Of a stretch of 64,000 bases of DNA, positions 9,420 through 59,967 are shown piece after piece. Each line of letters starts with the position of its first letter. The stretch's first letter is position 1. The position numbers and the translations under genes were made by a program. The notes beneath the pieces were generated by a model. That model saw only the letters and a program-made list of their open reading frames with translations. It was not told where the DNA came from and did not search any database. This DNA comes from Phallusia mammillata (Eukaryota): assembly GCA_965637545.1 (NCBI GenBank), contig OZ281499.1, forward strand, positions 1,488,001 to 1,552,000, read 5' to 3'.

Positions 9420-9519
9420 TAGCAACCTTTTACATCGTATGCACTTGTTCTGTATTTGCTTTTACCACTGTTTGATTGTTGTATTTTTAAACGTGATTTT
9501 ATAATACACGATGTATCGA

Positions 9520-12303: not shown

Positions 12304-13390
12304 ATGACGTGTAGTATTGACGACGCCGTTGAGCAGTTTTGTGACGTAATAACGACAAACGATGAAGTTGTGCCTGAGTTGTGGGAAATGCAAAAGTTAG
12401 GTGGACAGTTGGAGAAAAAAATTAAGAAAAGAATTGAAAAAATTGTGCAGAAGAAGAAAATAAAACTAACGTTTTCCAAGCTCACTTACAAATCGCTGGA
12501 TGTTTCTGGTTCAAATGGAAACTTACTTGTTCGGCAAATTATTTCGGTTTTTAGCAGAGAGGAATTTTACAAACCTGGCATGTGTATCGGGTTGACGGTG
12601 GAAGACATCGACAAGCCTGATGCAGCGATTGTTGTGTTTACAAAGGGCCGGGTAGAACTTTTTGACGCACCGCAGGAAAATGAGAATGAAACAATACATT
12701 GGGACGTTATATTTTCGGACAGGATGTGTAAAGTTTGGAGGAATCTTGGGACACCAGGATACGAGCCAGCTGATCTTGAAACAAAACGCAGGGAATTTGC
12801 AGAAACTTTTCCTAAACTATGGTGCACCACATTCAGTAAAATGGATCTAGTTGAACGCCATTTTCTTTATGGCTTGGCATTAGAGATGGCGAAACCCAAA
12901 ATGCCGTTTCATTTGAACCACGAAGACATTAAGCACATTCCTACTGCTGCTTGCATCAAAATTGCGATTGAAATGGGTCAGACAAGTCGTTTGGAGTTGG
13001 TTTTCGGGTCACGTAAAAAAAACGAAGCCAGTCAGGATTCGCTTGGTAACATCGAATTTGTTCCCAAACACAAACTACGACTCAATGAGGCAAAAGCTAT
13101 AATCAAAACGTGAGTATAAAAGTTTAGCTTGCGATAAAAAGGCACGTTTTCATCATTATACATTTTATGTGTCTAAAATTTATGTCAAAAATTACAAAAA
13201 GCAGGTTTATGGTATTGTCGAATTATTTTAATTGAACTTAGCTTACATGATACCGAGCTGATTTGCAAAAACTAAAAATAATCAATTTATTTTGTTGTTT
13301 AGTTATCTCGGAGACAAGGATGACTTACCCCACACAACTGTTACAGGAAAGATTGAAGAAATCAAAATATTTTTTGCCTTAAACCTTTAA
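12304..13390 (+). CDS. MTCSIDD family copy 6, intact (exons 12304-13109, 13303-13390)
   Basis: 269-aa ORF, GTGAGT donor, tttag acceptor, exon 2 YLGDKDDLPHTTVTGKIEEIKIFFALNL*. Confidence 0.85.
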
Positions 13391-14269
13391 TGGCAAAATC
13401 TGTAGTGAATGTTTGTTTTTCTATATTTGTTTCTACCAGCAAATGACTGTAAATTCAAATTGATTTGTGGCAGAATTTCATTTTGTTAACAGTAACATAA
13501 GTTAAAGGTAATTACGTTGTGAGATGAAAATTGAGTTCAAACAAGCGCATGACTTAACTTTTTGTATAATATGATTGACTATATAACATGCTCCAGTAGT
13601 TTTTTTAATTTTAACTCTTGTAGCTTTTTCATGTGTGATGTGAAAAAACAAAAAGAAAATCTAAAGCACATGGTTTGGTTTCACCTTTGATTACACCAAA
13701 CTGACAAGAATCTTCCTGGTGAAGGACGCTACAGTTCACTACAGTTCGTAGCTGTGTAATGTTTCAGCCCAGGCGGAAAATTGTCCCGATTCGTTCATGT
13801 TTGTGTCACGTACGATTTTCTGGTGATAATCATAGTAATATAGGGTTGTTATGTACGGAACGTTTACATCTGATTATGCATAATGCTAAGGTGAAGTTCT
13901 TACATGATTTTCTGAGAATACACTCGCATTATCCGTACATAGCCTATACCTGCGCTTTTCTAATGTTAAACTGTGATAAACCTATCGAGATAGGCCTTGG
14001 ATGAAGTTCGACTGGGATTTCCAGCTCGGAGGAAAGCGACAGGCTGTTTGTCTCAGCGTTTTTTTTTACACTAGGAGAAAATACGAAAGCGTTTCGTCAT
14101 GTTTATAGTAATGACACCTGGAGTTTAACCGATTTTTCGAACCCTGGCGTAACTTGTATTTACATAAAGAAGAAATTGCACCGGACTTGACAATAAAACC
14201 TCACTCAGCTGCGAGATTCGGTAAAACACAGGGGCAGTCTCATCAAGTACGGTGTAGCTGCAGCGCGTT

Positions 14270-14397
14270 TAGCCGTAATACACCAATTGTGACCTTCACT
14301 TTTTTGCGCTCAATACCGTTTTAAACGTTGTGCAGCTATTTCCGGCTTGGTGATTGTTTTAGTGCATTTGTGTCGCTATTTTTTTAACAAGCGAAAA
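14270..14397 (+). repeat. Interspersed repeat cggtgtagctgcagcgcg...ttccggcttggtgattg (also ~26040-26185, partial ~25720-25790, ~61399-61541)
   Basis: Multiple diverged copies in unrelated contexts. Confidence 0.65.
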
Positions 14398-19114: not shown

Positions 19115-19364
19115 CAGTGGTTCTCAAGTCGATTTACTCGACTATTTCACATACTATTTGTCTCTATTGAGGTTTTTCACGATTACGGATTCTTGTTTAC
19201 TCAATTCGACCTTTTCAAAGCCGAAATTAGTACCGAATTTAAACACGAGTGGGCCATTAACACTTTTTAGGGGGCCACATGACTTACAGAGTTACTTGAA
19301 GGGGCCACGAGGCCCAAATGTTACTTTTAGGGGCCCACGATCCACGAAAGGTTAAGAACCACTG
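19115..19364. mobile_element. Older hAT-type MITE
   Basis: Ends CAGTGGTTCTCAA / TTAAGAACCACTG; TSD degenerate (tttcagta vs ttttagca). Confidence 0.65.
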
Positions 19365-29677: not shown

Positions 29678-29719
29678 GCCCTGATGAAGGCGAGCTGACT
29701 AGGACGTTGAAACGTCGGT
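29678..29719 (+). ncRNA. Minimal type I hammerhead-ribozyme-like motif (duplicate at 36037-36078)
   Basis: gcc-CTGATGA-a-ggcg...cgtt-GAAA-CGTC-ggt: intact core, GUC triplet, 3-bp stem I, weak stem II with two GU pairs. Confidence 0.35.
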
Positions 29720-40200: not shown

Positions 40201-42648
40201 ATTTGCATAGTATATTAAAGGGTCAATTTGGAAACACTTGCTGGACATTCTTGCACAATATTGTCAGCAATGTCGTGTCCCATATTGTGTGTTAATATCT
40301 GGCTACAGCTCAAAAGTTTTGAACTTTTCCAGACCCCAAGTGTTTTGTGAGATTTCAACAAGAGAAATTTAGAAGCCTAAACGGACGTAAAAGAGACCTG
40401 CATAAACGTTTTAGCAAAATGCTTGTGCCATGATCAGTCATTTATTGTATTTGTCAAAATACATTGCATTGACTTTTGTCGGAACGTGTGGAAATTATAG
40501 TGTCTCATTATACGTCCATACTGACATGCTTTACGTCTAGCAATAGTAACAGGATATATTAAAACGTATGCATGCGAAATTAGAATGTTAAATTTTGGGG
40601 TTAAATTTTATCCTCGATATCTGCAAATGGGTAAAAAAGAGAAAAGGGGCTGAGAACGTATGATGGAAAGTGTGGATTCATCTTGTGCTGTTGTTTGATT
40701 TCGAAGGTTCGATCCCCAGACGAACCAATGGTCAAGCGACGTAGCACCTACAAGTACATGTAGAACCAGTGTTGGTGTAGCAGTATTGGATGGATATCTG
40801 TATGCTGTTGGAGGGCAAGACGGGATGTCGTGTCTTAACATCGTTGAGCGGTAAGTTTTGGTCCTGGTTCTAAATGTATGTACCTACAGGCTGTACGCAC
40901 TTACACGATAATTTAAAAGTCAATAGTTAAATCGTGGTACAGCAATTTTAATTAACCAACTGGTCTTCGTTTATGTTTTGAAATTTGGTGATCGCTGTTT
41001 AAATCAGACGTGGGCGGCCTTTTAATCACCGTGTACCAATTTATAGCAATGACTTCGAGTGCCAACGTTTGTGTGTGTAAAAGCGATGTGCGTAAGCTGA
41101 ATAAAACTGTTATTAGAATGTATATTCGTACGTGTAGCCCTTTTTTACGATTTTTAAATCATAACAAGCGCAAAACAAGTATTGTAATGGTTCAAATTAC
41201 ATCAAAAAGTACTAGAATTCGAAGTTCTGAATCACTCGTTAAAAAAATGCTTTGCTGATTTTCCAATTTTATCGCCCGTTACTGAAACACATAACTGTTA
41301 ACCTAAACAACAGCACTAATATTCCAGGTACAGTTCAAAGGCAAACCGCTGGATTAAAGTTTGCTCGATGCGAACCAAACGTCTCGGGGTCTCTGTGGCG
41401 GTTTTGGGAGGATACTTGTACGCAGTTGGGGGTTCGGACGGACAGACGCCCTGGAATCTCGTGGAACGATATGACCCTAAGGAAAACCGCTGGTCTGACG
41501 TGGCACCCATGAGCACAAGACGAAAACATCTCGGTTGTGCGGTCTACAGGGTAAGTAGAAGGGGATAGGCATAAACTGGAAGTGTTCAGATTGGTTGTGG
41601 GCCGGAAAAATGTGTTCTGATTGGTTGAGTGCCAGTTAAAAGTGTTCTGATTGGTTGAGTCCGGTCAAAAATGTTCTGATTGGCTGAGTGCCGGGTAAAA
41701 GTGTTCTGATTTGCTGAGTGCCGGGTAAAAGTGTTCTGATTGGCTGAGTGCCGGTTAAAAGTTTTCTGATTGGCTGGGTGCCGGGTAAAAGTGTTCTGAT
41801 TGGCTGAGTGCCGGTAAAAGTGTTCTGATTTATTAAGTGCCGGTTAAAAGTTTTCTGATTGGCTGAGTGCCGAGTAAAAGTGAATATAGTTTAGCCCTTA
41901 CACACAGGACATGCTGTACGCTGTTGGTGGAAGAGACGACACCACTGAGCTGAACACAGTGGAAAAATACAACCCCAACACCAATACGTGGAGCACAGTT
42001 GTCGCTATGAACTCACGAAGAAGCGGGGTAAATTGCAAGAAAGGAGCATTTATTGCGGATGTGTTATTCCGTGGTCAAAATGTTTCGTTAAAATTGGTTT
42101 GTGGGAGAGTTGTAAGCGGGCCTGAAAGTACAAGTCCGAAGCCTGGTCCGTTTGATTGACAGGTCCCTCTTCAAAAGCTCACAAGACGTACTACTGTACA
42201 GAATATAATTAAAAACCGCGTTTTGATGCTGTTGGGCATTAGGTGAAGTCCAGCAACTAGCTACTGAATTGCATAATTAATCTGAAAAAAAATTAAAGTC
42301 CGACCTGAATTAGGCCCGTTTGTTCGACTAAACCTAAGCCCGAAACAGAACCCGGCCCGACTTACAACTTTGGTTTGTGGCTCATCAGACCCAGCTAAGT
42401 TATAAAAATGTTAACATCTGTGCAGTCACAAGAGGTTCGAGCAGGTTCTAACCCATTTTTTTCGCTTTTAGGTTGGCTTAGCTGTAGTGAACGGACAACT
42501 TATGGCTGTCGGAGGCTTTGACGGAACCAGCTACCTCAAAACGATTGAGATTTTCACTCCTGAAGCTAACACGTGGAGAATGTATGACGGAATGCACTAC
42601 AGACGACTTGGAGGGGGTGTGGGGGTGATAAGGCTCCCCCAAACCTGA
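37242..42648 (+). CDS. KLHL20: Kelch-like protein 20 / diablo orthologue, BACK plus six Kelch repeats; exons 37242-37375, 37743-37901, 39002-39215, 39738-39915, 40707-40850, 41328-41550, 41908-42027, 42472-42648; 5' (BTB) exons not found
   Basis: All exons have GT/AG ends and compatible phases. The translation ([42 protein letters not shown]-type, [56 protein letters not shown]) matches my recollection of vertebrate KLHL20. Confidence 0.92.
41581..41880 (+). repeat. Intronic minisatellite, 10 units of ~30 bp (gtgttctgattggctgagtgccgggtaaaa)
   Basis: Directly visible periodicity; 8 of 10 units retain GATTGG. Confidence 0.95.
42106..42370. mobile_element. MITE-like repeat with AGAGTTGTAAG/CTTACAACT ends (relatives ~22373-22480, ~45840-46067)
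   Basis: Inverted termini and shared aaagtacaag/cccga motifs. TSD not resolved. Confidence 0.55.
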
Positions 42649-44047
42649 CCACCCCCCGGGTACCAATCCCTGGGAATGTTGATGATGATGCAACAAAACA
42701 AGGAGTCATAGAAATCAGAGGAATTTTCGCCACGCTTGACTGAAGCTGGGTTGTCTAGTTTTGGAGTTCATTTAATCAGTTTTTGATTTTAGGGCAATTT
42801 GGAGACAATACAACCTCTTTGCGATTGTCCTGGAAATCAAGTCATATGAAATCTGAGTTCATTGTTCAAGTTCACTGGCGAAGAATGATTCACACCGTTT
42901 CATGTCGCAAAAAAACGAAGTTATTATGTTTTTGGTTTTCTGCAACCAAATATTTGTTTTATTTTTCAAATCATTATATTTTTGCTTCGCGTTTATTATT
43001 CTGGAATTATAGACCTATAAAAAATTAAGTGCTGTCCAAACAGTTAACGACTCGCATCGTTCTTTGAAGTTTCCAATTATCGGTTGGTTTAAATTGGACT
43101 TGTGAATTTTATGAATATAGCCTACGTCTTCCCAACCTTAATTTGTCCGCAAACTTAACGCAACGGAACTGGTTGAGTTCTAAACAATAAATTAACTTTT
43201 TCTGTGGGCGTTATTGCCCATCGTTTAACAAAGTTGGACCGGTTCATGACCTGCAGAGGACATTTGGTGCGGCCTGCCATCGCAAAATTGTTGCATTTAC
43301 ATTTTTGCCTTGAAACGTGGAAGACGTTTATGATGACGCCTAACCACTCCTAGGTCTGTAAATCCTCAAAGTGAAATGGATTTTCTTGGACACAATGAGT
43401 TTTCGTAAATTTGCTGGTGTCACTTTGTGTTGCTAGGCCTGGAATTAAACAGCTCTGCTCGTTCATTGTTTGACGTCAACACTTGCTTAGTGTTAAACGT
43501 GAACTTGGGTGAAAAAAAAACGTGCTTTGTTTTGTCTGACGTCAATAAGAGCCTCAGTGACGACATAAAGGAACTTGTTCGGCTTTGTGAAATCACAAGT
43601 TCGAGTTACTGTGTGAGATATTATGACGTTACAAGTTTGACTTATTGTGACGTCATTGCTCGAGGTAATGTGACGTTACATACTTGAATTAAAATGACGT
43701 CCGGTAAGCACATTATTTAGTCAATTTTAGTTGGTTCAATCAAAAAAACGCGCTTGCATCTTTGTTTCTCGTATTCGAAACAACTTTGGGAGATAAGTTT
43801 GAAATGTTTGTGAGGATTTTGTTACGGAGGTCCTAACTTATTCACTGTGGTTCGTCCACTCCGCTATGTTGTGCTTCCACAATGTGTTTAATAAACGCCC
43901 TAAAATAAGTGTTATTACTGGTGTAGACAATGCAATGGTGAACTACAGTTTGTAAACAGTTGCTCGAGTTTTAATGTTAACTTGACTAGCTTCCGATGTT
44001 TCTTAGCGTTTACAAAAATAAGTTTGGTTTTCAAACCGGTTATGTGA

Positions 44048-44127
44048 CGTAATAACGACAAACGATGACGTTGTGGAATATGGACAAGTTATGGGGAGAG
44101 TTGGAAGACAAAATTGTGGCCAGAACA
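44048..44127 (+). pseudogene. MTCSIDD family copy 7, short degenerate 5' fragment
   Basis: gtgacgtaataacgacaaacgatgacgttgtgg...ttggaagacaaaattgtggccagaaca matches the DVITTNDDVV...LEDKIVART coding sequence with indels. Confidence 0.75.
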
Positions 44128-44443
44128 AACGGCCGGTGTTCATCATAATCTGCCAGGTATAAGTATTCCAGAAAGCTGATAATGTGAACCAAAGTAAACT
44201 TTGATTAGTCGCTTATAAACAACTGTTGAATTCATCGCTCATACAGAGTCCCGGCAACGCGATTAATCCTCTGTTTTTTCTCTTTTCCGCTGCTTTAATC
44301 GTGATGAAAATATTCTGCAGGTGTGTCACAAGGGACATTTGTAATAGATACATCGTGTATTATAAAATCACGTTTTGAAAGATATGCAAATCACTCAGTA
44401 GAAAGCACTACAGAACAAGTGCACTCGATATAAGAGATTACTA

Positions 44444-45609
44444 TCAGTTTTCCAAAGCGAAGAAATTTTTCATTTCTTTAAACTTCGCAGTGACGTTCGC
44501 CCGAGGAAAGTCATCTTTGTTTCCAAGATACCTGAACATAAAATCATTTGATTACTTTACAGTTGCTTCCCAGCAACTCGATTGTGTGACAAATGTTATG
44601 TTCTATTTTTGAAAATTAGAACTGAACAAGTTTACGAATAATTTTAATTTATCGTCATGTATATCTTCCTTCATGATTATAATATCTTTATTATGCTTAA
44701 ACCATCCAAACATATTGTTGAGCTAACTAGATCTTTTTGAAATGTTGACTGAACTTAACGCATCAGGTCTTTATGTCTCGAACCGAATGTTTTGACTCAC
44801 GTTTTGATCATAGACTTTGCTTCACTGAGTCTCTGTTCGTATTTCAAAATGAAATCGTTGTTGTCAGCTAATTCCTGATTGGCTTCGCTTTTCGTTGTTA
44901 AACCCTGGACCACTCGGCGCGAGCCAAAAATCCATTCCAAACGACCAGTTTGACCGGTTTCGAGCGCAATTTTAATGCAAGCGGCAGCAGGAATATGCTG
45001 GTAGCGACGGTCCTGATAATACGGCATCTTCGGTTTTGCCATTTCGAGAGCCAAAGCATAGAAGATATGGCGATAAACTGGTTCAATTTTCTCCAGTGAT
45101 AAGTTCCAGATTTTTGGAAAAACTTCTGCAAATTCTTTGCGTTTTGTTTCAAGGTCAAGTGGTTCATGACTCGATAGCCCTTGATTTCTCCATCTGCTGT
45201 CTGAAAATATTTTATCCCAGTACATTCTATCTTTATCGGTCTTTTTTGGCAAGGTTATAGCCTCTACCCGACCTTTACTAAACACAACAATCACTGCGTC
45301 TGGCTCGTTATCCATCATCAACACGATACACATGCCAGGTTTGTAGAATTTTTTGTCGCTAAAAAACGAAATGATTTGTCGAACTAATAAGTTTCCGTTT
45401 GAACCAGAAACCTCAAACGATTTGTAAGTTGGCGTGGAAAACTTTATTTGCTTCTTTCTCTTTTCCCTTAGGATTCGAACTCTGTCCATAATTTTGTCCT
45501 CCAGCCTTCCCCCTAACTTGTCCATATCCCACAAATCAGGCATAACGTCATCGTTTGTCGTTATTACGTCACAAAACTGTTCAACGGCGTCATCAATACT
45601 ACACGTCAT
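44444..45609 (-). CDS. MTCSIDD family copy 8, intact (exons 45609-44801, 44531-44444)
   Basis: 270-aa ORF, canonical GT/AG on the minus strand, exon 2 YLGNKDDFPRANVTAKFKEMKNFFALEN*. Confidence 0.85.
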
Positions 45610-46757
45610 AGCTGTTGGATTTGTCTTGTTTGGAAAAGATCCAGATACGAATGAGATTTCTAAAAACGTTTCCAGTCCACAGACATATATGTAGAAGTAG
45701 ATTGCGCCACATCATTGAAAAGGGGCATCCCCAGTTTGCTGATTTCTGTTTCCCCTAAACCTGGCAAACGTGATCCGGCTACGTCGCGATGAAACGAGCG
45801 TCGCAGTGTCTGCGTTGCAGAGTTTTAAACGAGAATGAGATTGGAGACTGAACCTGAAAGTACAAGCCTGAACCCGGCTCGTTCCCGAATCGTTTTTGAG
45901 AAGCCCGTTAGGCCTGAAAGTTTGATTGACAGGCCTATATACACGGTCGGTCGGGTCTAGCAACGGCTACTTTGCTTGTTAAATTTATTTAAAAAACTGA
46001 CACCGAGTGTAAAACAGGCCCTTTTTTGAAAAAAACTTCAACCCAAACCCGACCGAGTAACAACTCTGTTGCATTGACACAATTCATTTTTTTCGGTCTA
46101 CATTACTGGTAAAGTTCGCGTTATTTGTCTGTTTGTCGGCTTCAAAAGTATAGTTACATGTTGCAACAGGTTCCAGTCTGGGCAAGTTTACAACCAAGAT
46201 GTCTCTGACGCGTCCAGCAATATTTCACACATTAAATCCCCCTCCATGCCTTTTGTTCTAATGTTACACATCGCATTTGATCAATGATTAAATAATGTAT
46301 TGCGCCACGTGAAAGCTTTTAATTTACGTTGTTAAGCTTTCACGTAATACTTCAAAGTAAAACCCACCAAATTGTTAATACTTAACCCAGTGATATTTAA
46401 ACTGTATTTCGCGGCACGCTGATGCGCCCGCAAAGATGTCAAAGCATACAGCGGAATATTCTTTTACCAACTTTTGTGTTGTTGGCCTGCGCATTGAGAA
46501 ATTTTAAACAGAAGTACCAGGTAAATCCAGGTCTTTTGTTTGCGTCTCCTTTGACGTCCAAGCACCATCGAACAAAAAGGGACTTGTAGTAAAAACGTCA
46601 ATCAAAAATGATTGAAAAATTTAAAACCACAAAAGCATTTTTAGCTTGTTGCCAAGTGTGAAAGTCGCAAAGCAATGTAAATAATTTACAAACATTTAGC
46701 GGCGAAAACAAACATTCAATAAGTACACTTAATACATTGTCCACTGACAAGTTGTCG

Positions 46758-47887
46758 TTAGTTTTCCAAGGCGAAAAACTTCTTCATTTCTTCAACCTTT
46801 GCTGTAACGTTCGCCTGGGGAAAGTTTTCCCCATCTTTGTCTCCAAGATACCTAAACATAAAATATGTTTTCTACTTCCTCTCAAGCAGATAAATATATT
46901 GCGTCTATAAGCTGCGTTCAATTTAAAAAAACAAACATGTAAAACGGCTTGTTTTTACCTGAATTATTCGACGAAAAACCAGAAGATGTCTGAATCAATA
47001 CATTTGTGAAGTTATCATTTCAAAAAAATTGACTTTTCAATGTTGGGTTAGACCAATGCTTATACTCACATTTTAATCATTACTTTCGCCTGGTTGAGTC
47101 TCCATTCGCCTTTTTGAATAAATTCAGTGTTGTCAACTACATCTTGACCAAATTCATTCTGTGCCTGTTTGGTTCGGCCTTTACGCGCCCCAAACACATT
47201 CTCAAAACGACCTGTTTGGCCTGTTTTAATCGCAATTTTAATGCAAGCAGCAATGGGAATGTGCTTGTATGTATCGTGATGCAAATGAAGCTGCATTTTG
47301 GGCTTGGCCATTTCTGATGCCAATGCATAGAAAATATAGCGATAAAGTGGATCAATTTTCCCGAATGGTAAGTTCCAATCTTTGGAAAAAGTTTCTGCAA
47401 AATTTCTGCGTTTTGTTTCAAGGTCATTTGGGTCATATTCTGTTCTTCCTATTTCCCTCTGTAACTCACACATGCTATCAGCAAATATTTTATCCCATAA
47501 TGCTCTTTGATGCTCAGTTTTCTTCGGCGCAGTAAAGGTTTCAGGTCGGCCTTCTTTAAATACGACAATCACTGCGTCTGGCTCGTTATCCACCGTCAAC
47601 ACGATACACATGCCAGGTTTGCAAATTTCTTTTTCGCTGAAAACTGAAATAATTTGACGAACGAGCAAGTTTCCGTTGGAATCAGAAACCTCCAACGATT
47701 TGTAAGTTGGCTTGGAAAATGTGATTTGCTTTCTTAAGTTCACTTTGATTATTCGAGTTCTGGCAACAATTTTTTCCTCCAACTCTCCACCTAACTTGTC
47801 CATATCCCACAATTCAGGCAGAACGTCATGGTTTGTCGTTATTACGTCACAAAACTGTTCAACGGCGTCATCAATACTACACGTCAT
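46758..47887 (-). CDS. MTCSIDD family copy 9, intact (exons 47887-47070, 46851-46758)
   Basis: 273-aa ORF, canonical splice sites, exon 2 YLGDKDGENFPQANVTAKVEEMKKFFALEN*. Confidence 0.85.
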
Positions 47888-48910
47888 GTTCTTCAGTTTA
47901 CGTCTTGTTGGGAAGCGATCCAGATGGAACTTCGCTTTTTATTGAAGTTCCCAGGTTAACTTATACAAGCAGATTGAGCCACACTTTCAAAAAGGTGCAT
48001 TCCCCGTTAGGTGACTTTTGTTTCCCCCTCGCGTAATAAACCTGATCGCGATATACGTACGTCACAATGTAACATGCGTAGGTTCTACGTTGACACAGTG
48101 AGATTAATAGTTTTTCATCACTGGTAAAGTTTGCCTTATTTGTCTTTTATCGACTTCAAAGGATACTTACATGTTGCGACAGCTTCCGAGTCTGGACAAG
48201 TTCACAATCAAAATATCCTTGACGCGTCCAGCAACATTTCAACCATCAAATTCCCCATCATGCCCTTTGTTCTCGTGTTACACTTTGGCTTCGATCAATG
48301 ATTAAAGGAATGTATCGCGCCACTTGTAAGCTTTTTGGTTTACGTTGTTGAGCTTTCGCGCAATACTCTAAAGTAAATACCCACCAAATTGTTAATACTT
48401 AACCCAGTGATTCTTCAACTGTATTCTGCGGCACGCTGATGATCCCGCAGAGATGTCAAAGCGTGCAGCGGAATATTCGTTATTTTGTACTGGAAACATT
48501 CTCTTATGTTTTCGGGTTTGATGAACAAATGTGACTTGTATGATAACGTTTTAAAGTTATTTCATACTTATTTGTCATAAAAGCAATTCCATCACACTAA
48601 CGTTGCAAACTAATTTCTTTTGATAACTTTTGTGTCGTTGCCCTGCTCATTGAGAAGTTTTAGACACAAGCACAGAGTAAATACAGGTTTGCATCTCGTT
48701 TGCCGGTCAATCATTATCAAATAAAATGCGACTTGTAGTAAAAACGTCAATCAAAAATAATTGGAAAATGTAAACCACAAAACCATTAGTTTTAAGCTTG
48801 TTGCCAAAACATAAAAGGCGCAAAGCAATGTAAATAATTTACAAACATTTAGCGGCGAAAACAAACATACAATAAGTACACTTAATACATTGTCCACTGA
48901 CAAGTTGTCG

Positions 48911-50015
48911 TTAGTTTTCCTAGGCGAAAAACTTCTTTATTTCTTCAACCTTGGCTCTAACGTTCTGCTGTGGAAAGTTTTCGCCATCTTTGTCTCCCAG
49001 ATACCTTAAAGTTAAAAAAAATTATAAATTTTACAGCAAGCTGCGTTCTATTAAAGAAATCAAAGTAAATTGACTTGTTTTAACCCAAAGTTTTAACCCA
49101 AATTATTCGACGAAAATCACAGGATATTCAAACAAAATTTGAAGTTATTATTTGAAAAAGTGGACCAATATTTGGTTAGAGTTAGACCAATGCTTCTACT
49201 CACATTCTGATTAAGGCTTTCGCCTGATTAAGCCGCCGTTCATGATTTGGGATATGTTCAGTGTTGTCAACTACATCTTGACCAACTTCGCTTCTTGCCT
49301 GTGGGTTTGGAGGTTTGCGCGCCCCAAATACCATCTCCAGCTGACCTGTCTGACCAGTTTCCATTGCGATCTTAATACAAGCAGCAGTGGGAATGCGTTT
49401 GATGCCATGGTGATCCAAATGAAACGGCATTTTTGGTTTCGCCATTTCGAATGCCAAGCCGTAAAGAAAATGGCGATCAACTAGATCGGTTCTCGCAAAT
49501 GGTAATTTCCAAATTTTGGGAAAATTTTCAACAAATTCTCTTCGTTTTGTTTCAAGATCAGTCAGCTCGAAACCTGACGTCCCATTGTTTCTCCAAACCT
49601 CAGACAACCTGTCAGAAAAAATGTGGTCCCAGCGTACGGTATTACATCTCGGGTTTCCCTGGGTTGTTATAACTTCTGACCGCCCCGCTTTAAAGACAAC
49701 AATCGCCCCATCAGGCTTGTGATCTACCATCAATACAATACCTATGCCAGGTTTGTAAATTTCATTTTTGCTAAGTACTGAAATAATTTGCCGAACAAAC
49801 AAGTTTCCGTTTGAACCAGAAACCTCCAAGGATTTGTAAGTGGGTTTTGCAAACGTTATTTGCCGGTCCTTTTTCAAAACTCGAATTCTCCTCATAATTT
49901 TTCTTTCCAACGCTCCGCCTAACATGTCCATGTCCCTCAATTCTGTTACAACGTCATCGTTCGTCGTTATTACGTCACAAAACTGCTCGGCAGCGTCATC
50001 AATACTACACGTCAT
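48911..50015 (-). CDS. MTCSIDD family copy 10, intact (exons 50015-49204, 49004-48911); closest to copy 2
   Basis: ORF 49200-50024, canonical splice sites, in-frame exon 2. Shares the QGNP(R/K)CNTVRWDHIFSDRL segment with copy 2. Confidence 0.85.
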
Positions 50016-50659
50016 GACTGGCACTTTACGGGTTGTCTGCAGATAATCTTATAACTCGCAAGTGAAGCTTTCGTTTCACAAGTCCCAGTCCTTTTAAACA
50101 TGGTTAAGAATGAGATTTCACAATAGAGTTAAAAAGGTGAATCCCTTTTCTGGCGACTTGACTCTCTCTACTTCAAAGTACTTTGTCACAATGCTGTCAC
50201 TCAATAAATTATTATTCTCCTGTTACATATTGGATATTTCGAACATGTTTTGAAGGCATTGTTTACCATTGCGCCACCAAAGTAACGCAATATAGTCCTG
50301 ACAGTTGGAAAAATAAACTTGTTTTTGTGAATGCTGTGAACAATCAAAGCAAGGATAAAGGGTTTTGCTTTCATCTTTCGTCGAGAAACTTTCGTTCACC
50401 ATTGCATTGTCTATCTTAAACAAAACAAAAAAACAAAAATAAAATTTATTTTAGGGCGTTTATTAAACACATTGTGGAAGCACAATATATTGGAGTGGGC
50501 GAACCACAGTGAATAAGTTGGGACCTCCGTTACAGAACTCTCACGAAAATTTCAAATTTAGTGGAAATCATATACCTAAAAAATATAAACACGGGCTATT
50601 AGGATGGTGTTAATAAGATAGATCTTGACAGGCCCAAAAAATAAAGAGACTAATGGTAC

Positions 50660-51110
50660 GCTCTTCTACCGACTACTGTGCCAAAGTCTGGTTTCGCGGC
50701 GCCATATTGTTTTTCGTGTCTAGACTCTAGATGCCTGCGCTGGCCACATCAACGACAAATCTGTAGTTTTAGCAGGAATTCTGCCAACCGAGCTTCGTAC
50801 AAAAAGCTGTACTATTTCTGCCTTGTTTACTACAAAAAACCTGAACACATGCTCCCTTACAGCCTCCTGGCTTCTCACAACATAGGACACTGGCAACACA
50901 AATCACAACATTCATTTCACTGGAGCTGCTAAACGAATCTAATGAGCTGCATGGCACCGGTGTGTCTCGATGGGCAGGTCACAAATGGAAGCTTGTGTGG
51001 CGAGGAAGCAGTTTCCGATTCCAAGCGCTCATTAGTGTCGTCTTCAGCTCGACACTAGCTGGAATGCAATTTTCTGGACTTTCCTGTGTCAAGCTTAATC
51101 TCTTTTTTCG
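50660..51110 (+). mobile_element. Degenerate 3' fragment of a non-LTR retrotransposon (RTE/RTEX-like region downstream of the RT domain)
   Basis: Frameshifted translation gives DYCAKVWFRG, CLR, VLAGILPTELR, WAGHKW, CVKLN, which resembles the recalled EYCAPVW...LAGIQPAELRR...WVRLNRLRTG LINE tail. Confidence 0.6.
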
Positions 51111-52099
51111 CCCGTCAATGCACATATATCTTGACACAGAAGATCAGAACACATCATAACATCCTGCAACATTTACCGTCATCCGAATGGGTTTTAAAGT
51201 CGGACAGCTGTCGACGAATCTATCAATTTAAATAGATGATCTTCTGAACTATCCTGCTCATACGAAGAAGAATCCCAGTTTACAGAACTGAAAGTACAAA
51301 ACGTGTAATATCAATTTTCCTTAGCGACTCAACGCACCCAGGAAGATTCTATACTATATGCTGCTATGCTTGCAGTATAAAAGTCATTAGGATAATTTTG
51401 AAGCAGAAAGTATGAAGTAATCCGTCCTGTGATTTCTATATGAGTGTGCCGTGTTCACTTGTCTGCATGGACGCTTCAGGACTGATCCCAGTTATGAAAT
51501 TATGTTTATCTTAATCAAACTGGTGTTGATTATACTTCATGCAACGTAATGAGCATACATATGTTTGTTGACTCGGTGTTGCTAATGTCGTGACATGCCA
51601 CAACGATGTTGGTTGTTGAAATAACCTAGTCGTCTCACGTACTTACAAAAACTTTTGATAACTATTAGCTGGTGATGTTATTACATCATTCCGATGGTAC
51701 AAGGGTTTCCAAAAAAATTCAGTTACAGACCTGTGTGTGAAATATTGTCTTTCAATCAGCCATGACATTGAACTTTGACGCGCCCAGAAACATTTATAGA
51801 TGGACTTCTGTCGTCACACACACAACATCTAAATATATTCTGCATCTAAAAAAAGCTCAAACGCTGCTTTGTGATGTTTTCGCGGTATTGGTTGGACGTG
51901 AACCTAAACGAATGCTTTTAAAGGCAAAATGCGGAAGTTGGGGCTTTTGCGAGACTCAAAGGGAAATTCAGCCAAAGGGGGCGTGACCCTGTAAGACGCA
52001 GTTTACTGCTGGGCTATGTTTATCTGCTGAACTATGACTTTAAATAAGAACCCCGCATTTGCACCAGATTTGCTGCGTAGAAGTTGTGAACTGACAGAA

Positions 52100-53386
52100 A
52101 TGATGTGTGGCAGTGATGACGTTGTCGAGCAGCTCTGTGACGTAATAACGACAAACGATGACGCTGTGCCTGAGTTGTGGGACATGGACAAGTTAGGGGG
52201 AGGGTTGGAGAAAAAAATTAGAAAAAGAATTGAAGAAATTGTGCAGGAGAAGAAAATAAAACTAACGTTTTCCAAGCTCACTTACAAATCGCTGGATGTT
52301 TCTGGTACGAACGGAAACTTACTAGTTCGGCAAATCATCGCTGTTTTTAGCGACAAAAAAAATTACAAACCTGGCATGTGTATCGTGTTGACGGTGGATA
52401 ACGAACCGGATGCAGCGATTGTCGTGGTTAAAGAAGGTCGACTTGAAACCTTTACAGTGCCGAAGAAAACTGATCATCAAAGAGCATTGTGGGACAAACT
52501 ATTTTCAGATAGCAGGTGTGAGGTTTGGAAAGAAAAAGGAAGAACAGAATATGAACCAAACGACCTTGAAACAAAACGCAGAGATTTTGCAGAAAATTTT
52601 TCCATACTTTGGAACTCACTATTCGGGAAGATTGATCCACTTTATCGCCATGTTTTCTATGGTTTGGCATCAGAAATGGCAAAACCCAAGTTGAAGTCTC
52701 ATGTGGATCACGATGTCTACAAGCATAATCCTACTGCTGCGTGCATCAAAATCGCAATTGAAACCGGACAGACAGGTCGTTTGGAGAATGTGTTTGGGGC
52801 GCGTACAAAGCGAGTCAGACAGCAGGCACAAAGTGAAGTTGGTCAAGATGTAGTTCACGCATCTGAATTAGTTCCAAAGCACGAACGGCGGCTTCGTGAA
52901 GCAAAAGCCTTGATCAGAATGTGAGTTTACACGTTCAAACTGAGATAGAGAAGTATATCTCTTTCAGATGTGGAATGTTAATTTTGGCAAAACCACTCAA
53001 CGTGTTAGTTTATTACGTTCGTTAACAAATCGTTTGTTTTAGAAATTAGTGTGACTATCTTAATAAGTCATGGCGTTCTCAAAACTTTTTTTACAAACTA
53101 GTCTGGCTAATTTTTGCTCATTTTTTTATATCCGGATGTTATCAAAAGTTAAGTGGCAAAATGTGAACGACATTTAGCGGATATTCGGTTAATTATATGC
53201 AAACATGTTGGGTGCAAACAACCAGTAACAAAACAAAACGTACTCAAGCGATGACGATGTCGTTGGTAGTAATGAAACTATTTTATGTTTATGTATCTGG
53301 AAGACAAAGACGGAGAAAACTTTCCACATGAAGACGTTTCAGCAAAGGTTGAAGAAATAAAGAAGTTTTTCGCCTTAGAAAACTAG
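52100..53386 (+). CDS. MTCSIDD family copy 11; exon 1 intact (52100-52920), exon 2 (53293-53386) acceptor mutated as in copy 3
   Basis: The start variant MMCGSDD aligns to the family start. The acceptor reads gtttat|gtat. Nearly identical to copy 3 from mid-exon 1 through ~1 kb downstream. Confidence 0.7.
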
Positions 53387-54850: not shown

Positions 54851-56014
54851 ATGACGTGTAGTATTGATGACGCCGTTGAGCAGTTTTGTGACGTAATAAC
54901 GACCAGCGATGACGTTATGCCTGACTTGTGGGATATGGAAAGGTTAGGGGGAGAGTTGGAAGAAAAAATTGTCGCCAGAACTCGAATAATCAAAGTGAAT
55001 TTAAGAAAGCAAATAACATTTTCCAAGCCAACTTACAAATCGCTTGAAGTTTCTGGTTCGAACGGAAACTTACTTATTCGACAAATCATTTCGTTTTTTG
55101 GCGACAAAGAAATCTACAAACCTGGCATGTGTATCGTGTTGACCTTAGATAACAAGCCAGATGCAGTGATTGTTGTGTTCACTGAAGGTCGGGTGGAACC
55201 TATAACTTTGCCAAAAAAGACTGAGGAAGATAGAATGTACTGGGATAAAATATTTTCAGACAGCAGATGGAGAAATCAAGGGCTATCGAGTCATGAACCA
55301 CTTGACCTTGAAACAAAGCGCAAAGATTTTGCAGAAGTTTTTCCAAAGCTCTGGAACTTATCACTGGAGAAAATTGACCCAGTTTATCGCCATATCTTCT
55401 ATGCTTTGGCTCTCGAAATGGCAAAACCGAAGATGCCGTTTTTTGGGGACTGTCGCTACCAGCATATTCCTGCTGCCGCTTGCATTAAAATTGCGCTCGA
55501 AACTGGTCAAACTGGTCGTTTGGAATGGATTTTTGGTTCGCGACGAGTGCATGATGGACCAGCAAAAAGCGAAGCCGATCAGGATTTAGTTGACAACAAC
55601 GATTTGATTTTGAAATACGAACAGCGACTCAGTGAAGCAAAGTCTATGATCAAAACGTGAGTCAAAACATTCGGTTTGAGACATAAAGCCCTGACCCAAA
55701 TTTTGTCAACATTTTAGAAGTTTGGAGTTAGCTCAACAAGCTTTGTTGATTGGTTTGAGTTCTGTGAAGATTGTATACTCGTAAATAAAATATATACCTA
55801 ACGTTAAAATAAAATAGTCCGTAAACTTGTTCAGTTCTAATTTCCAAATATAGAACATAACATTTGTCACACAATGCCGAGTTGGTGGGAAGAAACTGTA
55901 AAGTAATCAAATGATTTTATGTCCAGGTATCTTGGAAACAAAGATGACTTTCCTCGGGCGAACGTCACAGCGAAGTTTAAGGAAATGAAAAACTTCTTCG
56001 CTTTGGAAAACTGA
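54851..56014 (+). CDS. MTCSIDD family copy 12, intact (exons 54851-55656, 55927-56014)
   Basis: ORF 54752-55660; the family-aligned ATG is at 54851. Acceptor tccag, in-frame exon 2. Confidence 0.85.
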
Positions 56015-56785
56015 TAGCAACCTTATATATCGTATGCACTTGTTCTGTATTTGCTTTTACCACTGTATGATTGTTGTATTTTTAAACGTGATTTTATAAT
56101 ACACGATGTATCGATTGTGACGAGATGTACTTCCCGACTCCATGCGCTCTTTAGTGTCATCAGCTCATGATCACCACCTGGAAAGCATTTCCCTAGAAAC
56201 CTAGACCTACCTGGGTCAAGCTCAATCGTCTTCGCACCGGCATTTGCATTTTCGCTCAACTTTGCACAGGTCGACATTGTGCAGAGGAGCAGGCCGCATA
56301 GTAACAATCTGGCCTATTTACCCCCAACCGTATAAGTCTTAAGTAGAGTTGTAAACGGTCCTGAAATTGGAGCCCGAACCCGAAAGTAGAAGTTCGATGG
56401 TGCAGGGATTTCAAAAACTGCAGTTACAGACTTGTGTGAGAAATATTGTCTTTCAATCAGCCGTGACATTGAACTTTGACGCGCCCAGAAACATTTATAG
56501 ATGGACTCACCCACAACATCTAAATAGATTCTGCATCTAAAAAAAGCTCAAACGCTGCTTTGTAATGTTTTCGCGGTATTGGTTGGACGTGCTCCAGAAC
56601 GAATTCTTAAAAGGCAAATTGCGGAAGTTAGGGTTTTCGCGAGACGGAAAGGGAAAGTCAGCCAAAGGGGGCGTGACCCTGTATGGCACAATTTACTGTT
56701 GGGCCGTGTTCATCTTGACTATGACTTCAAATAAAAAGCCGCATTTGCACCAGATTTGCCGCGAACAGGTCATGAACTGACAATC

Positions 56786-58067
56786 ATGACGTGTAGCATT
56801 GATGACGCTGCCGAGAAGTTTTGTGACGTAATATCGATGAACGATATCGTAATTCCTGAGTTGTGGGATATGGATAAGTTGGGGGGAGCTTTGGAGGACA
56901 AAATTATGGACAGAATTCGAATCCTAAGGGAAAACGAAAGAAACAAATAGCATTTTGCAAGCCAACTTACAAATCGTTCGCGGTTTCTGGTATGAACGGA
57001 AACTTGCTCGTTCGGCAAATCATTGCTATTTTTAGCGACAAAAAATGTACGAACCTGGCATGTGTATCGTATTGATGGTGGATAACGAACCGGATGCAGT
57101 GATTGTCGTGTTCAATGAAGGCCGACCTGAAACCTTTACCGCACCGAAGAAAACTGAGCATCAAAGAGCAATGTGGAATAAAATATTTGCAGACAGCATG
57201 TGTGATGTGTGGAGGGAAAAAGGAAGAACAGAATATGAGTCAAACGACCTTGAAACAAGACGCAAAGATTTTGCAGAAACGTTTTCCAAAGATTGGAACT
57301 CTCCATTCGGGGAAATTGACCCACTTTATCGCTACATTTTCTTTGGCTTGGCAACAGAAATGGCAAAACCCAAATTGAAGTCTCATGTGGATCACGATGT
57401 CTACAAGCATATTCCTACTGCTGCGTGCATCAAAATCGCAATTGAAACCGGACAGACAGGTCGTTTGGAGAATGTGTTTGGGGCTCGTACAAAGCGAGTC
57501 AGACAGCAGGCACAAAGTGAAGTTGGTCAAGATGTAGTTCACGCATCTGAATTAGTTCCAAAGCACGAACGGCGGCTTCGTGAAGCAAAAGCCTTGATCA
57601 GAATGTGAGTTTACACGTTCAAACTGAGACAGAGAAGTATATCTCTTTTAGAGGCTAAATGTAAATTTTGGCAAAACACTCAACGTGTTAGTTTATTACT
57701 TTCGTTAACAAATCGTTAGTTTAGAAATTAGTGTGACTATCTTAATAAGTTATGGCGTCCTCAAAACTTTTTTTTACAAACCAGTCTGGCTAATTTTTGC
57801 TCATTTTTTTATATCCGGACATTATCGAAAGTTAGTGCCAAAATATGAACGCGTTTAGCGGATATTCGGTTAATTATTTACAAACATATTCGGTGCAAAT
57901 AACCAGTAACAAAACAAAACGTTTTGAAGCGATAACGATGTCGTTGGTAGCAACCAAATTATTTCATGTTTAGGTTTCTCGGAGACAAAGATGGGGAAAC
58001 CTTTTCACATGAGAACGTTTCAGCGAAGGTTCAAGAAGTGAAGCAGTTTTTTGCCTTGGAAAACTAG
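56786..58067 (+). pseudogene. MTCSIDD family copy 13, frameshifted pseudogene sharing two lesions with copy 5
   Basis: Same two 1-nt deletions as copy 5 (ORFs 56756-56950, 57045-57608). Exon 2 at 57974-58067. Confidence 0.85.
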
Positions 58068-58889
58068 CGGCAACTTGCCAATGGAATAACATCGTATATC
58101 GTGTGCGCTTACTTTATGTTTGTGTTTAACATAATACAATTATGTTGCTATATTTCAAAACTAATTTGGTAATAAACGATTATGATCTTTATGACATTTA
58201 GTTTGATTCTGTTTGAATAAGAACGACTGATGATGCCGTTATCGGTGAAATATATATCGTTAAACAACATTTGTTGACTAATTCTGATTAGAAAGCACTG
58301 TCAAATACTTCGTCAATTATTCTTACATGATCTTTATGACGCTAAGTTAATATTAACTCTTGGTCGATATTTATTATAAAGTGTTGCGGGCCACCTCAGC
58401 AACGTAAATCAAATCGCTTACACATGACGCAACACATTCATCTTTACTCTTTATCTATTACTGAAGCCGTGGCGTAACACGAGAACAAAGGGCATGGGTG
58501 GGAATTTGATCAGTGAAATATCGTTTATCCATAACATATCACGTTGCTGGACGCGTCAGGGACATGTTGGTTGTAAACTTTCTTCACACTAGAAGTTGTT
58601 GCAATATTTAATCATTATTAAAGCCGAAAATGGACAACTAACGCAAACCTAACCAGTGATGATAATTAAGTATTGACCCCCACTGTGTCAACGTAGAATC
58701 CACGCGCGTCCTGTTGTGACGTATATCGTGATCAGGTTTAACGCGCACAGGGGAAACAAAAGTCAGCTAATGGGGGATTCCTCTTTGCGACAGTGTGACT
58801 CAATCTGCTTGTACAAGTAAACCGGGACCTTCAATAAAAAGCGCAGTTCGTATCTGGATTACTTCACAACAAGACCAAAACTGACAGCC

Positions 58890-59967
58890 ATGACGTGTAG
58901 TATTGACGACGCTGTTGAGAAGTTTTGTGACGTAATAACGACAAACGATGACGTTGTGCCTGAGTTGTGGGGTATGGACAAGTTAGGTGGAGAGTTGGAG
59001 GACAAAATTATGGACAGAATACGAATCCTAAGGGAAAAGAGAAAGAAGCAAATAATGTTTTCCAAGCCAACTTACAAAACGTTCGAGGTTTCTAGTTCAA
59101 ATGGAAACTTACTTATTCGGCAAATCATTGCTGTTTTTAGCGACAAAGAAATCTACACACCTGGCATGTGTATCGTGTTGACTTTAGATAACAAGCCAGA
59201 TGCAGCGATTGTCGTGTTCAGTAAAGGTCGGGTAGAGCCTATAACTTTGCCGAAGAAAACTGAGCAAGATAGAGCAATGTGGGATAAAATGTTCTCAGAT
59301 AGCATGTGTGAGGTGTGGAGGGAAAACGAAATAGCTGGGTTTGACTCAGTTAATCTCGAAGCCAAACGCAGAGATTTCGCAGAAACTTTTTCCGAACTTT
59401 GGAGGTTACCATTCGGGAAAATTGATCCACTTTATCGCCATGTCTTCTATGGCTTGGCATCAGAAATGGCAAAACCCAAATTAAAGTCTCATTTGGATCA
59501 CGATGACATTAAGCACATTCCTACTGCTGCTTGCATCAAAATTGCGATTGAAATCGGTCAGACAGGTCGTTTGGAGTTGGTTTTCGGGTCACGTAAAAAA
59601 ACCGAAGCCAGTCAGGATTCGCTTGGTAACATCGAATTTGTTCCCAAACACAAACTACGACTCAATGAGGCAAAAGCTATAATCAAAACGTGAGTATAAA
59701 AGTTCAGTTTGCGATAAAAAGGCACTTTTTCATCATTATACATTTTATGTGAATAAAATTTATGTCAAAAATTAAAAAAAAACAATTTTAGGGTATTGTC
59801 GAATTATTCTTTTAGAACTTATATTATACCAAGCTGATTTGCAGAGACTAAAAATAATCAATTTGTTTTGTTGGTTTAGTTATCTCGGAGACAAGGATGA
59901 CTTACCCCTGACAACAGTTACAGAAAAGATTGAAGAAATCAAAATATTTTTTGCCTTAAACATCTAA
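58890..59967 (+). CDS. MTCSIDD family copy 14, intact (exons 58890-59689, 59880-59967)
   Basis: 267-aa ORF, canonical splice sites, exon 2 YLGDKDDLPLTTVTEKIEEIKIFFALNI*. Confidence 0.85.

What the first reader, a model, noticed from the sequence alone, without database searches (positions are those of the whole stretch)
12304..59967. Paralogs are patchwork mosaics of shared modules (gene conversion or unequal crossover)
Segment relationships conflict. N-terminal KIRKRIEEIVQ..KIKLTFSKLTY is shared by copies 3, 6 and 11; KIVARTRIIKVNLRKQ by 9 and 12; (M/L)DR(I/V)R.LRE by 1, 5, 8, 13 and 14. The middle of copy 12 groups with copy 8 (DRMYWDKIFSDSRWRNQGLSSHEPLDL). Copy 14 switches from 12-like KGRVEPITLPKKT to 1-like DKMFSDSMC.VWREN.IAGFDSVNL and ends with the copy-6 tail GSRKK.EASQDSLGNIEFVPKHKLR. 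The middle of copy 6 resembles copies 2 and 10. Exon 2 length (88 vs 94 nt) tracks only the C-terminal type. This is combinatorial diversification without any recombinase signal that I can see.
Basis: seen in the sequence. Interest (0 to 1): 0.72.

Follow-up and report, generated by a model that had tools for sequence, protein, structure and literature searches.

The report
Mosaic paralogs from gene conversion
A sea-squirt cluster of about 16 copies of an uncharacterised gene really is a patchwork in which copies have swapped stretches of sequence, by ordinary copy-and-paste repair and unequal crossing-over between neighbouring duplicates, a well-known way for tandem gene families to evolve.

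Summary
The window holds 12 full-length copies (10 intact, 2 frameshifted) and 2 fragments of a two-exon gene. Four more copies and a fragment lie just to the left.

**Tests for recombination**
- No single tree fits the gene: four segments give different trees, and each segment's data reject the other segments' trees (AU test).
- PHI z = -21. It is still significant at third codon positions (z = -8.8) and at purely silent sites (p = 0.0035).
- 20 of 120 pairs carry over-long identical tracts.
- A copying model needs 37 donor switches, against 14 ± 4 in simulations without recombination.

**Clear events**
- Twin copies identical over 2.3 kb differ only in a 90-bp patch that matches a third, inverted copy.
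- The last 280 bp of one pseudogene were overwritten by another type.
- Hybrid genes sit at the edges of duplication blocks.

**Reading.** This is germline interlocus gene conversion plus unequal crossover, a known kind of process that needs no special recombinase signal. dN/dS is about 0.3, and independent DNA runs hold the same mosaics, so nothing points to programmed or somatic diversification.

**The protein.** It belongs to an ascidian-wide uncharacterised family with no Pfam domain and no recognisable fold.

**Open points.** Long-read confirmation was not possible. An earlier report of this scan (s1-399146) described the same kind of mosaicism in another gene family of this genome.

The parts
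1086..2292 (+). Copy 1: exon 1 1086-1903, intron, exon 2 coding part 2199-2292 (94 nt). Likely donor type of the patch in copy A.
   Evidence: A cols 169-258 are 99% identical to copy 1
3155..4630 (+). Copy 2: exon 1 3155-3972, exon 2 4537-4630 (94 nt). With copy 10 and D it forms the only lineage painted without donor switches.
6414..7700 (+). Copy 3, a hybrid. Its upstream region is like that of copy 12 (83-94%). Its coding 3' part and downstream are like copy 11 (97-100%). The exon 2 acceptor has changed from AG to AT.
8794..9081 (+). Copy 4, a fragment: the 3' third of a copy-12-type gene, left by a deletion relative to the right-hand block.
10191..11476 (+). Copy 5, a frameshifted pseudogene and twin of copy 13. 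The two are identical over alignment columns 1-396 (99% to column 556).
12304..13390 (+). Copy 6. Its upstream is 92-100% identical to copy 14 and its 3' end (12909-13113) 97%. Its core 12586-12908 matches nothing in the cluster above about 79%, except 91% to copy 10/D near its 3' end. Exon 2 is 13303-13390 (88 nt).
44038..44126 (+). Copy 7: an 89-bp fragment matching alignment columns 32-131 of the family.
44444..45609 (-). Copy 8, twin of A (outside the window). The two are 100% identical over 2.3 kb except at 45352-45441, where A carries a copy-1-type patch. Exon 2 is 44444-44531 (88 nt).
46758..47887 (-). Copy 9, twin of B. Their differences are densest at 47630-47695, the same place as the A/8 patch. 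Exon 2 is 46758-46851 (94 nt).
48920..50015 (-). Copy 10, twin of D, with 1 difference in exon 1. Exon 2 has an early stop (85 nt).
52100..52924 (+). Copy 11, exon 1. Its upstream and first ~370 nt are 96-100% identical to the truncated copy E left of the window. From about 52465 on it is 96-100% identical to copy 3. Its exon 2 lies downstream and has the same AG-to-AT acceptor change as copy 3.
54851..56014 (+). Copy 12, a mosaic: 54851-55055 copy-9-like (92%), 55056-55207 copy-14-like (91%), 55208-55660 copy-8/A-like (93%, with a 100-bp stretch at 100%). Exon 2 is 55927-56014 (88 nt).
   Evidence: Exact contigs 54874-55130 in X2 and X3 bridge the first junction.
56786..58067 (+). Copy 13, a transcribed and spliced pseudogene. 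56786-57333 matches copy 5 (99%) and 57334-57608 matches copy 3 (100%). The intron is 57605-57973 and exon 2 is 57974-58067 (94 nt).
   Evidence: RNA contigs 57262-57432 and the joint 57604>57974 are.
58890..59967 (+). Copy 14, a seven-segment mosaic. 58890-58964 is copy-6-like; 58965-58995 B/9-like; 58996-59139 A/8-like; 59140-59249 12-like; 59250-59420 1-like; 59421-59504 11/3-like; 59505-59693 copy-6-like (99%). Exon 2 is 59880-59967 (88 nt).
   Evidence: The exact contig 59128-59435 in X2 and X3 bridges the 12-like/1-like junction.

Best explanation
The cluster is a tandem and inverted array of a lineage-specific ascidian gene. The gene has an exon 1 of about 810 nt, an intron of about 190-560 nt, and an exon 2 with 88 or 94 coding nt. 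The array grew by repeated segmental duplication.

Because the copies stay 70-90% identical and lie 2-50 kb apart, germline homologous repair sometimes uses a neighbouring copy as template. Two outcomes are visible.
1. Short non-reciprocal gene-conversion patches of about 90-300 bp, which paste one copy's sequence into another. This also happens between inverted copies.
2. Unequal crossovers (non-allelic homologous recombination), which create hybrid genes, truncated copies and changes in copy number at block edges.

The exchanged modules are old lineages (dS 0.4-1.3 between types), so the shuffling yields new combinations of pre-existing variants rather than new mutations. Events of several ages are superimposed, with tract identity to the donor running from 100% down to about 90%.

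Shown here: the mosaic itself, its statistical significance, its presence at silent sites, the patch and hybrid anatomy, and the gene model. Inferred: the repair mechanism, the direction of each transfer, and that the events happened in the germ line.
For: - **Trees.** Segment trees differ, and each segment's data reject the trees of the other segments (AU p < 0.01, delta lnL 24-614).
- **PHI test.** z = -21, against about 0 in 25 no-recombination simulations. At third positions z = -8.8, and at silent sites in invariant codons z = -2.8, p = 0.0035.
- **Tract test.** In a GENECONV-like run test, 20 of 120 pairs are significant after Bonferroni correction.
- **Copying model.** It needs 37 switches, against 14.2 +/- 4.0 (maximum 26) in 100 simulations.
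- **A and copy 8.** They are 100% identical over 2.3 kb. 16 of their 17 differences fall in columns 176-264, and 14 of the 17 A states equal copy 1, which is on the opposite strand.
- **Copies 5 and 13.** They are identical over columns 1-396 (99% to column 556). Beyond column 556, copy 13 is 100% identical to copy 3.
- **Copies 6 and 14.** Their upstream flanks are 92-100% identical and their 3' ends 92-99%, but their cores only 64-82%.
- **Hybrids.** Copy 11 is copy E (5') joined to copy 3 (3'). Copy 3 has the upstream region of copy 12.
- **Independent sequence.** Exact contigs from other studies bridge three junctions.
- **Fit to known process.** Tract sizes and identities match what is known of interlocus gene conversion: 50 to several hundred bp, mostly above 80% identity (PMC3924818).
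Against: - No single long read spanning a gene could be examined. The public runs were available only as short contigs of 170-780 bp.
- The two large blocks (about 98% identical) could in principle be uncollapsed haplotypes rather than paralogous duplicates. Some 'paralog' comparisons (A/8, B/9, D/10) would then be allelic. This was not testable here.
- For the older modules (about 90% identity) no near-identical donor exists in the assembly, and the core of copy 6 has no donor at all. Those events are therefore inferred less directly.
- The segment boundaries for the AU tests were chosen after looking at the data.
Confidence: 0.9

Rival explanations
1. The mosaics are assembly chimeras: similar paralogs were mis-joined by the assembler, so the patchwork is not in the animal.
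For: The region is repeat-rich. The window also contains a 6.36-kb tandem duplicate at 99.98% identity (27933-34292 = 34292-40650), which could itself be an assembly artefact. No long read was checked.
Against: - Contigs from other studies (X3 of study P2; RNA run X9 of study P6) match exactly across the junctions at 55055/6, 59249/50 and 57333/4.
- DNA runs X2 and X3 cover 30 and 28 of the 30 bins of 54700-60000. The listed differences that were traced are explained by cross-laid paralogs.
- Module identities of 90-97% to their nearest copy are not what mis-joining of existing copies would give; that would give 100%.
Confidence: 0.03
2. There was no exchange. The shared motifs arose by parallel or convergent selection on protein modules, or by uneven rates along the gene.
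For: Some shared runs lie in conserved parts (for example columns 5-57), where constraint alone lengthens identical runs.
Against: - The signal persists at third positions and at silent sites in invariant codons.
- Simulations with gamma rate variation on the best single tree give PHI z of about 0 and far fewer switches.
- Flanking non-coding DNA changes partners at the same places.
Confidence: 0.02
3. The shuffling is programmed or somatic diversification, in the manner of chicken immunoglobulin gene conversion or trypanosome mosaic VSG genes, with pseudogenes and fragments serving as donor cassettes.
For: Pseudogenes (copies 5, 13) and fragments (4, 7, E) sit among the intact genes.
Against: - The same mosaic sequences are found in DNA contigs of different studies, so they are inherited.
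- dN/dS is about 0.3 with no diversifying window.
- A pseudogene is itself a recipient of conversion (copy 13).
- No read-level heterogeneity was seen beyond cross-laid paralogs.
Confidence: 0.02
4. The left block (A-D, E, copies 1-6) and the right block (copies 8-14) are two haplotypes of one locus that the assembler laid side by side. The twin comparisons would then show allelic variants created by conversion, not differences between paralogs.
For: The blocks are colinear, in the same orientation, and 91-98% identical with large indels. That is within the range of allelic divergence reported for ascidians (own knowledge, not tested here).
Against: The blocks are joined without gaps, through about 20 kb of other sequence, in a 27-Mb contig. 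No depth test was possible. Even if this were true, the mosaics within each block (copies 12, 14, 6, C) would still need exchange between paralogs.
Confidence: 0.12

Closest known systems
Interlocus (ectopic) gene conversion and unequal crossover in tandem gene families, for example Arabidopsis RPP8 NLR genes (bioRxiv 10.1101/694240), copepod GOT1 paralogs (PMC3728101) and Caenorhabditis paralogs (PMC3966223); reviewed in PMC3924818
   Same: Nearby paralogs above about 70-80% identity; tracts of tens to hundreds of bp; phylogenetic incongruence along the gene; hybrid genes at duplication junctions; new combinations of old variants.
   Different: The gene family is an uncharacterised ascidian one. 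Rates, polymorphism and any selective value are unknown here.
Sea-urchin Sp185/333 (SpTransformer) genes, a clustered two-exon immune family described as mosaics of sequence elements
   Same: Small two-exon genes in tight clusters whose members look like patchworks; recombination among members is the proposed source.
   Different: No sequence similarity was found to any named family. Here the large exon comes first. The N-terminus shows no obvious signal peptide. The modules are homologous alternatives of equal length rather than presence/absence elements. No immune induction is known.
Uncharacterised ascidian proteins: Ciona intestinalis LOC100175694 (XP_002129972.3) and LOC104266160 (XP_009860047.1); Clavelina lepadiformis CAK8672537.1 / XP_076819564.1 and others
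   Same: They have the same length (about 270-320 aa) and match the family profile over nearly its whole length, with E-values from 1e-36 to 1e-22 for the named members. None has a Pfam domain.
   Different: They are only about 16-26% identical to the window copies. Nothing is published on them.
Mosaic receptor gene cluster on another piece of the same genome
   Same: The same genome and the same kind of conclusion: hybrid genes plus short copy-and-paste patches among tandem paralogs.
   Different: A different gene family and locus. I did not re-examine it.

Membership tests
Interlocus gene conversion / non-allelic homologous recombination among tandem paralogs | Paralogs physically close and similar enough to pair (about 70-80% identity or more) | tested here: met
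   16 full-length copies lie within about 70 kb; pairwise nucleotide identity is 68-100%
Interlocus gene conversion / non-allelic homologous recombination among tandem paralogs | Different parts of the gene support different trees | tested here: met
   AU tests reject each segment's tree on the other segments' data
Interlocus gene conversion / non-allelic homologous recombination among tandem paralogs | Unusually long identical tracts between otherwise divergent copies (the GENECONV criterion) | tested here: met
   20 of 120 pairs are significant after Bonferroni correction
Interlocus gene conversion / non-allelic homologous recombination among tandem paralogs | Signal present at silent sites and in flanking DNA, not only in protein motifs | tested here: met
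   Third positions z = -8.8; silent sites p = 0.0035; flank profiles
Interlocus gene conversion / non-allelic homologous recombination among tandem paralogs | Non-reciprocal patch: converted tract flanked on both sides by recipient-type sequence, with the donor unchanged | tested here: met
   A equals copy 8 on both sides of a 90-bp copy-1-type patch, and copy 1 keeps that sequence. That the donor did not change at the time of the event is inferred.
Interlocus gene conversion / non-allelic homologous recombination among tandem paralogs | Hybrid genes and copy-number change at crossover points (unequal crossover) | tested here: met
   Copy 11 = E 5' + copy 3 3'; copy 3 has copy 12's upstream; extra copy C; truncated copies 4 and E
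Programmed somatic diversification by gene conversion (avian Ig type, VSG type) | Sequence combinations differ between cells or individuals' somatic DNA, and arise from silent donors into one expressed site | tested here: not met
   The same mosaics occur in DNA contigs of separate studies, and a pseudogene is a recipient. Single-tissue deep sequencing was not available.
Sp185/333-like mosaic immune genes | Sequence homology, a leader exon with signal peptide, and element presence/absence patterns | tested here: not met
   No hit to any named family. The modules are equal-length alternatives with few indels. The signal peptide was judged by eye only.
Ascidian uncharacterised protein family (Ciona LOC100175694 and relatives) | Full-length profile match and shared conserved residues | tested here: met
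   50 representatives at E <= 0.001. The named ones come from Ciona intestinalis and Clavelina lepadiformis. G72, F135, R160, P211 and A219 are nearly invariant.

The most novel reading that the evidence does not exclude
The family could be a rapidly evolving intracellular defence or recognition family of ascidians with a fold not yet seen in solved structures. Germline segmental gene conversion among roughly 80 genomic copies would then be maintained by selection as a way to generate and keep many module combinations, as in plant NLR clusters or sea-urchin Sp185/333. The conversion tracts would still segregate as polymorphisms in the population.
Probability: 0.1. Interest if true: 0.6.

Novelty: new member of a known kind. 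Interest (0 to 1): 0.3.

Why it matters
It documents, with clean examples, how an orphan tandem family in a tunicate evolves. The examples are a 90-bp patch between inverted copies, an overwritten pseudogene tail, and hybrid genes at block edges.

For annotation and phylogeny, this means trees of these genes cannot be read as duplication histories, and orthology calls within the cluster are unsafe.

The mechanism itself is textbook. The more open question is what this ascidian-wide protein does: it has about 80 copies in this genome, no Pfam domain and no recognisable fold.

Tried and rejected
**Identifying the protein.** These searches gave nothing:
- Pfam
- PDB by sequence and by profile
- the word-based protein search
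- the ESM Atlas by features
- Foldseek against PDB: nothing significant; a weak, non-significant excess of nucleotidyltransferase and CD-NTase chains, which the VIA-align search did not support
- VIA-align wide (best Z 4.0)
- Atlas by fold (TM < 0.5)

A first structure model from an 18-sequence alignment was unusable (pLDDT 45). The second, from 57 sequences, was confident (pLDDT 88.7).

**Dead ends.**
- The genomic context of one metagenomic relative was uninformative.
- A literature search for the Ciona locus names found nothing.
- Diversifying selection was looked for and not found: median dN/dS is 0.32 and the highest window is 0.61.

**Artefacts set aside.**
- Clustered 'other letters' on copy 12 (55318-55348, 55440-55451) looked at first like a polymorphic conversion tract. 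They match copy 8/A letter for letter, so they are best read as cross-laid paralog contigs.
- The 'goes back 3961' joint (58660 > 54700) is an edge artefact of the paralogous upstream regions of copies 12 and 14.

**Steps not taken.** The spliced (joined) protein was not built or searched. Exon 1 products were used by reference, and exon 2 (29-31 codons) was only compared within the family.


Full report
**What is there.** GC content is about 38% and the window has no N.

A tblastn search and a nucleotide profile search find 12 full-length copies of one gene.
- Copies 1, 2, 3, 5 and 6 are on the + strand at 1086-13390.
- Copies 8, 9 and 10 are on the - strand at 44444-50015.
- Copies 11-14 are on the + strand at 52100-59967.
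- There are two fragments: copy 4 at 8794-9081 and copy 7 at 44038-44126.
- Copies 5 and 13 are frameshifted.

The cluster continues to the left of the window with four more intact copies, which I call A, B, C and D (all on the - strand), and a truncated copy E.

**Gene model.** The apparent stop codon of the 267-274-codon reading frame lies inside a conserved donor, AT|GTGAGT. A conserved second exon follows after 190-564 nt. An RNA-derived contig carries a SMART template-switch oligo as a loose end, and it joins 57604 to 57974 with GT..AG ends. This confirms the intron in copy 13.

Exon 2 has 88 coding nt in A and copies 8, 12, 6 and 14, and 94 nt in the others. In D and copy 10 it has 85 nt because of an early stop.

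I did not build or search the joined protein. All searches used exon 1 by reference.

I then tested the pattern formally on a 16-sequence, 838-column nucleotide alignment.

1. Nearest neighbours change along the gene for most copies.
2. The PHI statistic lies 21 standard deviations below its permutation mean, and 0 of 2000 permutations reach it. I simulated 25 alignments on the best single tree with the fitted GTR+G model and no recombination. They give z of about 0, with a minimum of -1.7.
3. Maximum-likelihood trees of four segments (columns 1-150, 151-290, 291-560, 561-838) differ. Each segment's data reject all the other segments' trees in AU tests (p < 0.01, delta lnL 24-614). The boundaries were chosen, but the likelihood differences are very large.
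4. A GENECONV-like permutation test of the longest identical run finds 20 of 120 pairs significant after Bonferroni correction.
5. A copying-model painting needs 37 donor switches, against 14.2 +/- 4.0 (maximum 26) in 100 no-recombination simulations.
6. The signal is not confined to protein motifs. At third positions PHI z = -8.8. The 47 informative silent sites in codons whose amino acid never varies give z = -2.8, p = 0.0035.

**Anatomy of the events.** The whole region is two colinear blocks.
- -13391..-6019 matches 41640..49017 at 97.7%.
- -4940..-531 matches 48062..52463 at 98.4%.
- 6403-8272 matches 52089-53954 at 96.8%.
- 8794-14076 matches 55399-60647 at 91.6%.
- Two further stretches to the right also match.

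This provides recent twins whose differences can be read directly.

- *A and copy 8* are 100% identical over 2.3 kb. Of their 17 differences, 16 fall in columns 176-264. There A is 99% identical to copy 1, which lies about 10 kb away on the opposite strand. Copy 8 resembles its relative, copy 12. A patch between inverted copies, flanked on both sides by recipient sequence, is gene conversion and not crossover.
- *B and copy 9* have their differences densest at the same place.
- *Copies 5 and 13* are identical over columns 1-396 and 99% identical to column 556. Beyond that column, copy 13 is 100% identical to copy 3.
- *C* has the flanks and 3' part of the B/9 type (96-100%), but a copy 3/11-type stretch at columns 113-237.
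- *Copies 6 and 14* share upstream DNA at 92-100% and their last ~230 nt at 97-99%, yet their cores are only 64-82% identical. Copy 14 is painted as 6 | B | A | 12 | 1 | 11 | 6.
- *Hybrid genes mark block edges.* Copy 11 shares its promoter region and first ~370 nt with the truncated copy E (96-100%), and everything after about 52465 with copy 3 (96-100%). Copy 3 has the upstream region of copy 12 (83-94%). Together with the extra copy C and the truncated copies 4 and E, this is the footprint of unequal crossover, or of duplication with breakpoints inside genes.

Tract lengths (about 90-300 bp) and partner identities fit what is known of interlocus gene conversion: means of 50 to several hundred bp, mostly above 80% identity (PMC3924818).

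**Age and selection.** Synonymous divergence between module types is 0.4-1.3. Median dN/dS is 0.32, and no 20-codon window exceeds 0.61. The modules are therefore old lineages under purifying selection that are being reshuffled. They are not products of hypermutation or of obvious diversifying selection.

Tract-to-donor identities range from 100% to about 90%, so events of several ages are superimposed. The core of copy 6 (12586-12908) has no donor in the assembly.

**Assembly artefact?** Only short contigs of public runs were available. Even so, three junctions are bridged by exact contigs.
- 54874-55130 and 59128-55435 region: exact contigs at 54874-55130 and 59128-59435 occur in run X2 and in run X3, which comes from an independent study. 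They bridge the junctions at 55055/6 (copy 12) and 59249/50 (copy 14).
- An RNA contig at 57262-57432 from a third study bridges 57333/4 in copy 13.

The listed differences that I traced match other copies of the family letter for letter, so they are cross-laid paralogs. The mosaics are therefore inherited sequence found in several samples. This also argues against somatic diversification.

I also could not test whether the two ~98% blocks are true duplicates or two haplotypes laid side by side. If they are haplotypes, the twin differences would be allelic products of the same process.

**What the gene is.** Exon 1 has no Pfam domain, no PDB relative by sequence, and no hit in the word-based search. 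The genome holds about 55 more copies at about 25% identity at C6:4.40-4.57 Mb, and a few on C1. These have the same donor position.

A profile of both groups finds 50 representatives in the large library. The named ones are uncharacterised proteins of Ciona intestinalis and Clavelina lepadiformis.

With 57 sequences AlphaFold gives a confident model (pLDDT 88.7, pTM 0.87). It has an N-terminal alpha/beta part and a C-terminal helical part. Foldseek, VIA-align and the Atlas give no convincing match: best Z 4.0, TM < 0.5. Function is unknown.

Seven sampled genes of the distant array also show a recombination signal (PHI z = -5.3), so mosaicism seems general in this family.

**Verdict.** The absence of a recombinase signal is expected for homologous repair. 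This is a new, well-resolved example of a known process, so its interest is modest.

An earlier report of this scan (s1-399146) reached the same kind of conclusion for another family on another piece of this genome. I did not re-test it.

Noticed in passing
window 27933-40650: There is a perfect tandem duplication of 6.36 kb: 27933-34292 equals 34292-40650 at 99.98% identity. It lies inside a BTB/BACK/Kelch-like gene; a BACK domain sits at 31330-31629 and again at 37689-37988. It is either a very recent duplication or an assembly artefact.
   Followed up: partly
window 56786-58145: Copy 13 is a frameshifted pseudogene, yet it is transcribed and correctly spliced in a SMART-type cDNA run. One cDNA 5' end (the template-switch oligo) lies at 57262.
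   Followed up: partly
window 56345-56385: A short stretch between copies 12 and 13 has contig depth about 100 times that of its surroundings in all three DNA runs, with many different loose ends. It is probably a high-copy dispersed repeat.
   Followed up: no
window 7605-7606 (copy 3) and the matching place in copy 11: The exon 2 acceptor AG has changed to AT in both copies. They may end at the TGA inside the retained intron, or use another acceptor.
   Followed up: no
G000:C6:4.40-4.57 Mb and C1:9.44-9.48 Mb (loci L004-L019): There is a second, larger array of about 55 genes of the same superfamily (about 25% identity), with the same intron position. Seven sampled members also show a recombination signal (PHI z = -5.3).
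   Followed up: partly
model m468ed300fefe (copy 9, window 47069-47887 -): The structure prediction is confident (pLDDT 88.7), but it has no convincing match in PDB or the ESM Atlas (best Z 4.0, TM < 0.5). It may be a fold not yet solved.
   Followed up: yes
window 21997-22290 (-): This cysteine-rich open frame (CPEGW...PCEPY...CVVC) reminded me of collagen-IV-type C4 domains. Pfam gave no hit.
   Followed up: partly
window 52034-52099 and 54752-54850: Copies 11 and 12 have in-frame upstream ATGs that lengthen the open frame to 296 and 302 codons. The other copies lack them, so these are probably not used.
   Followed up: no
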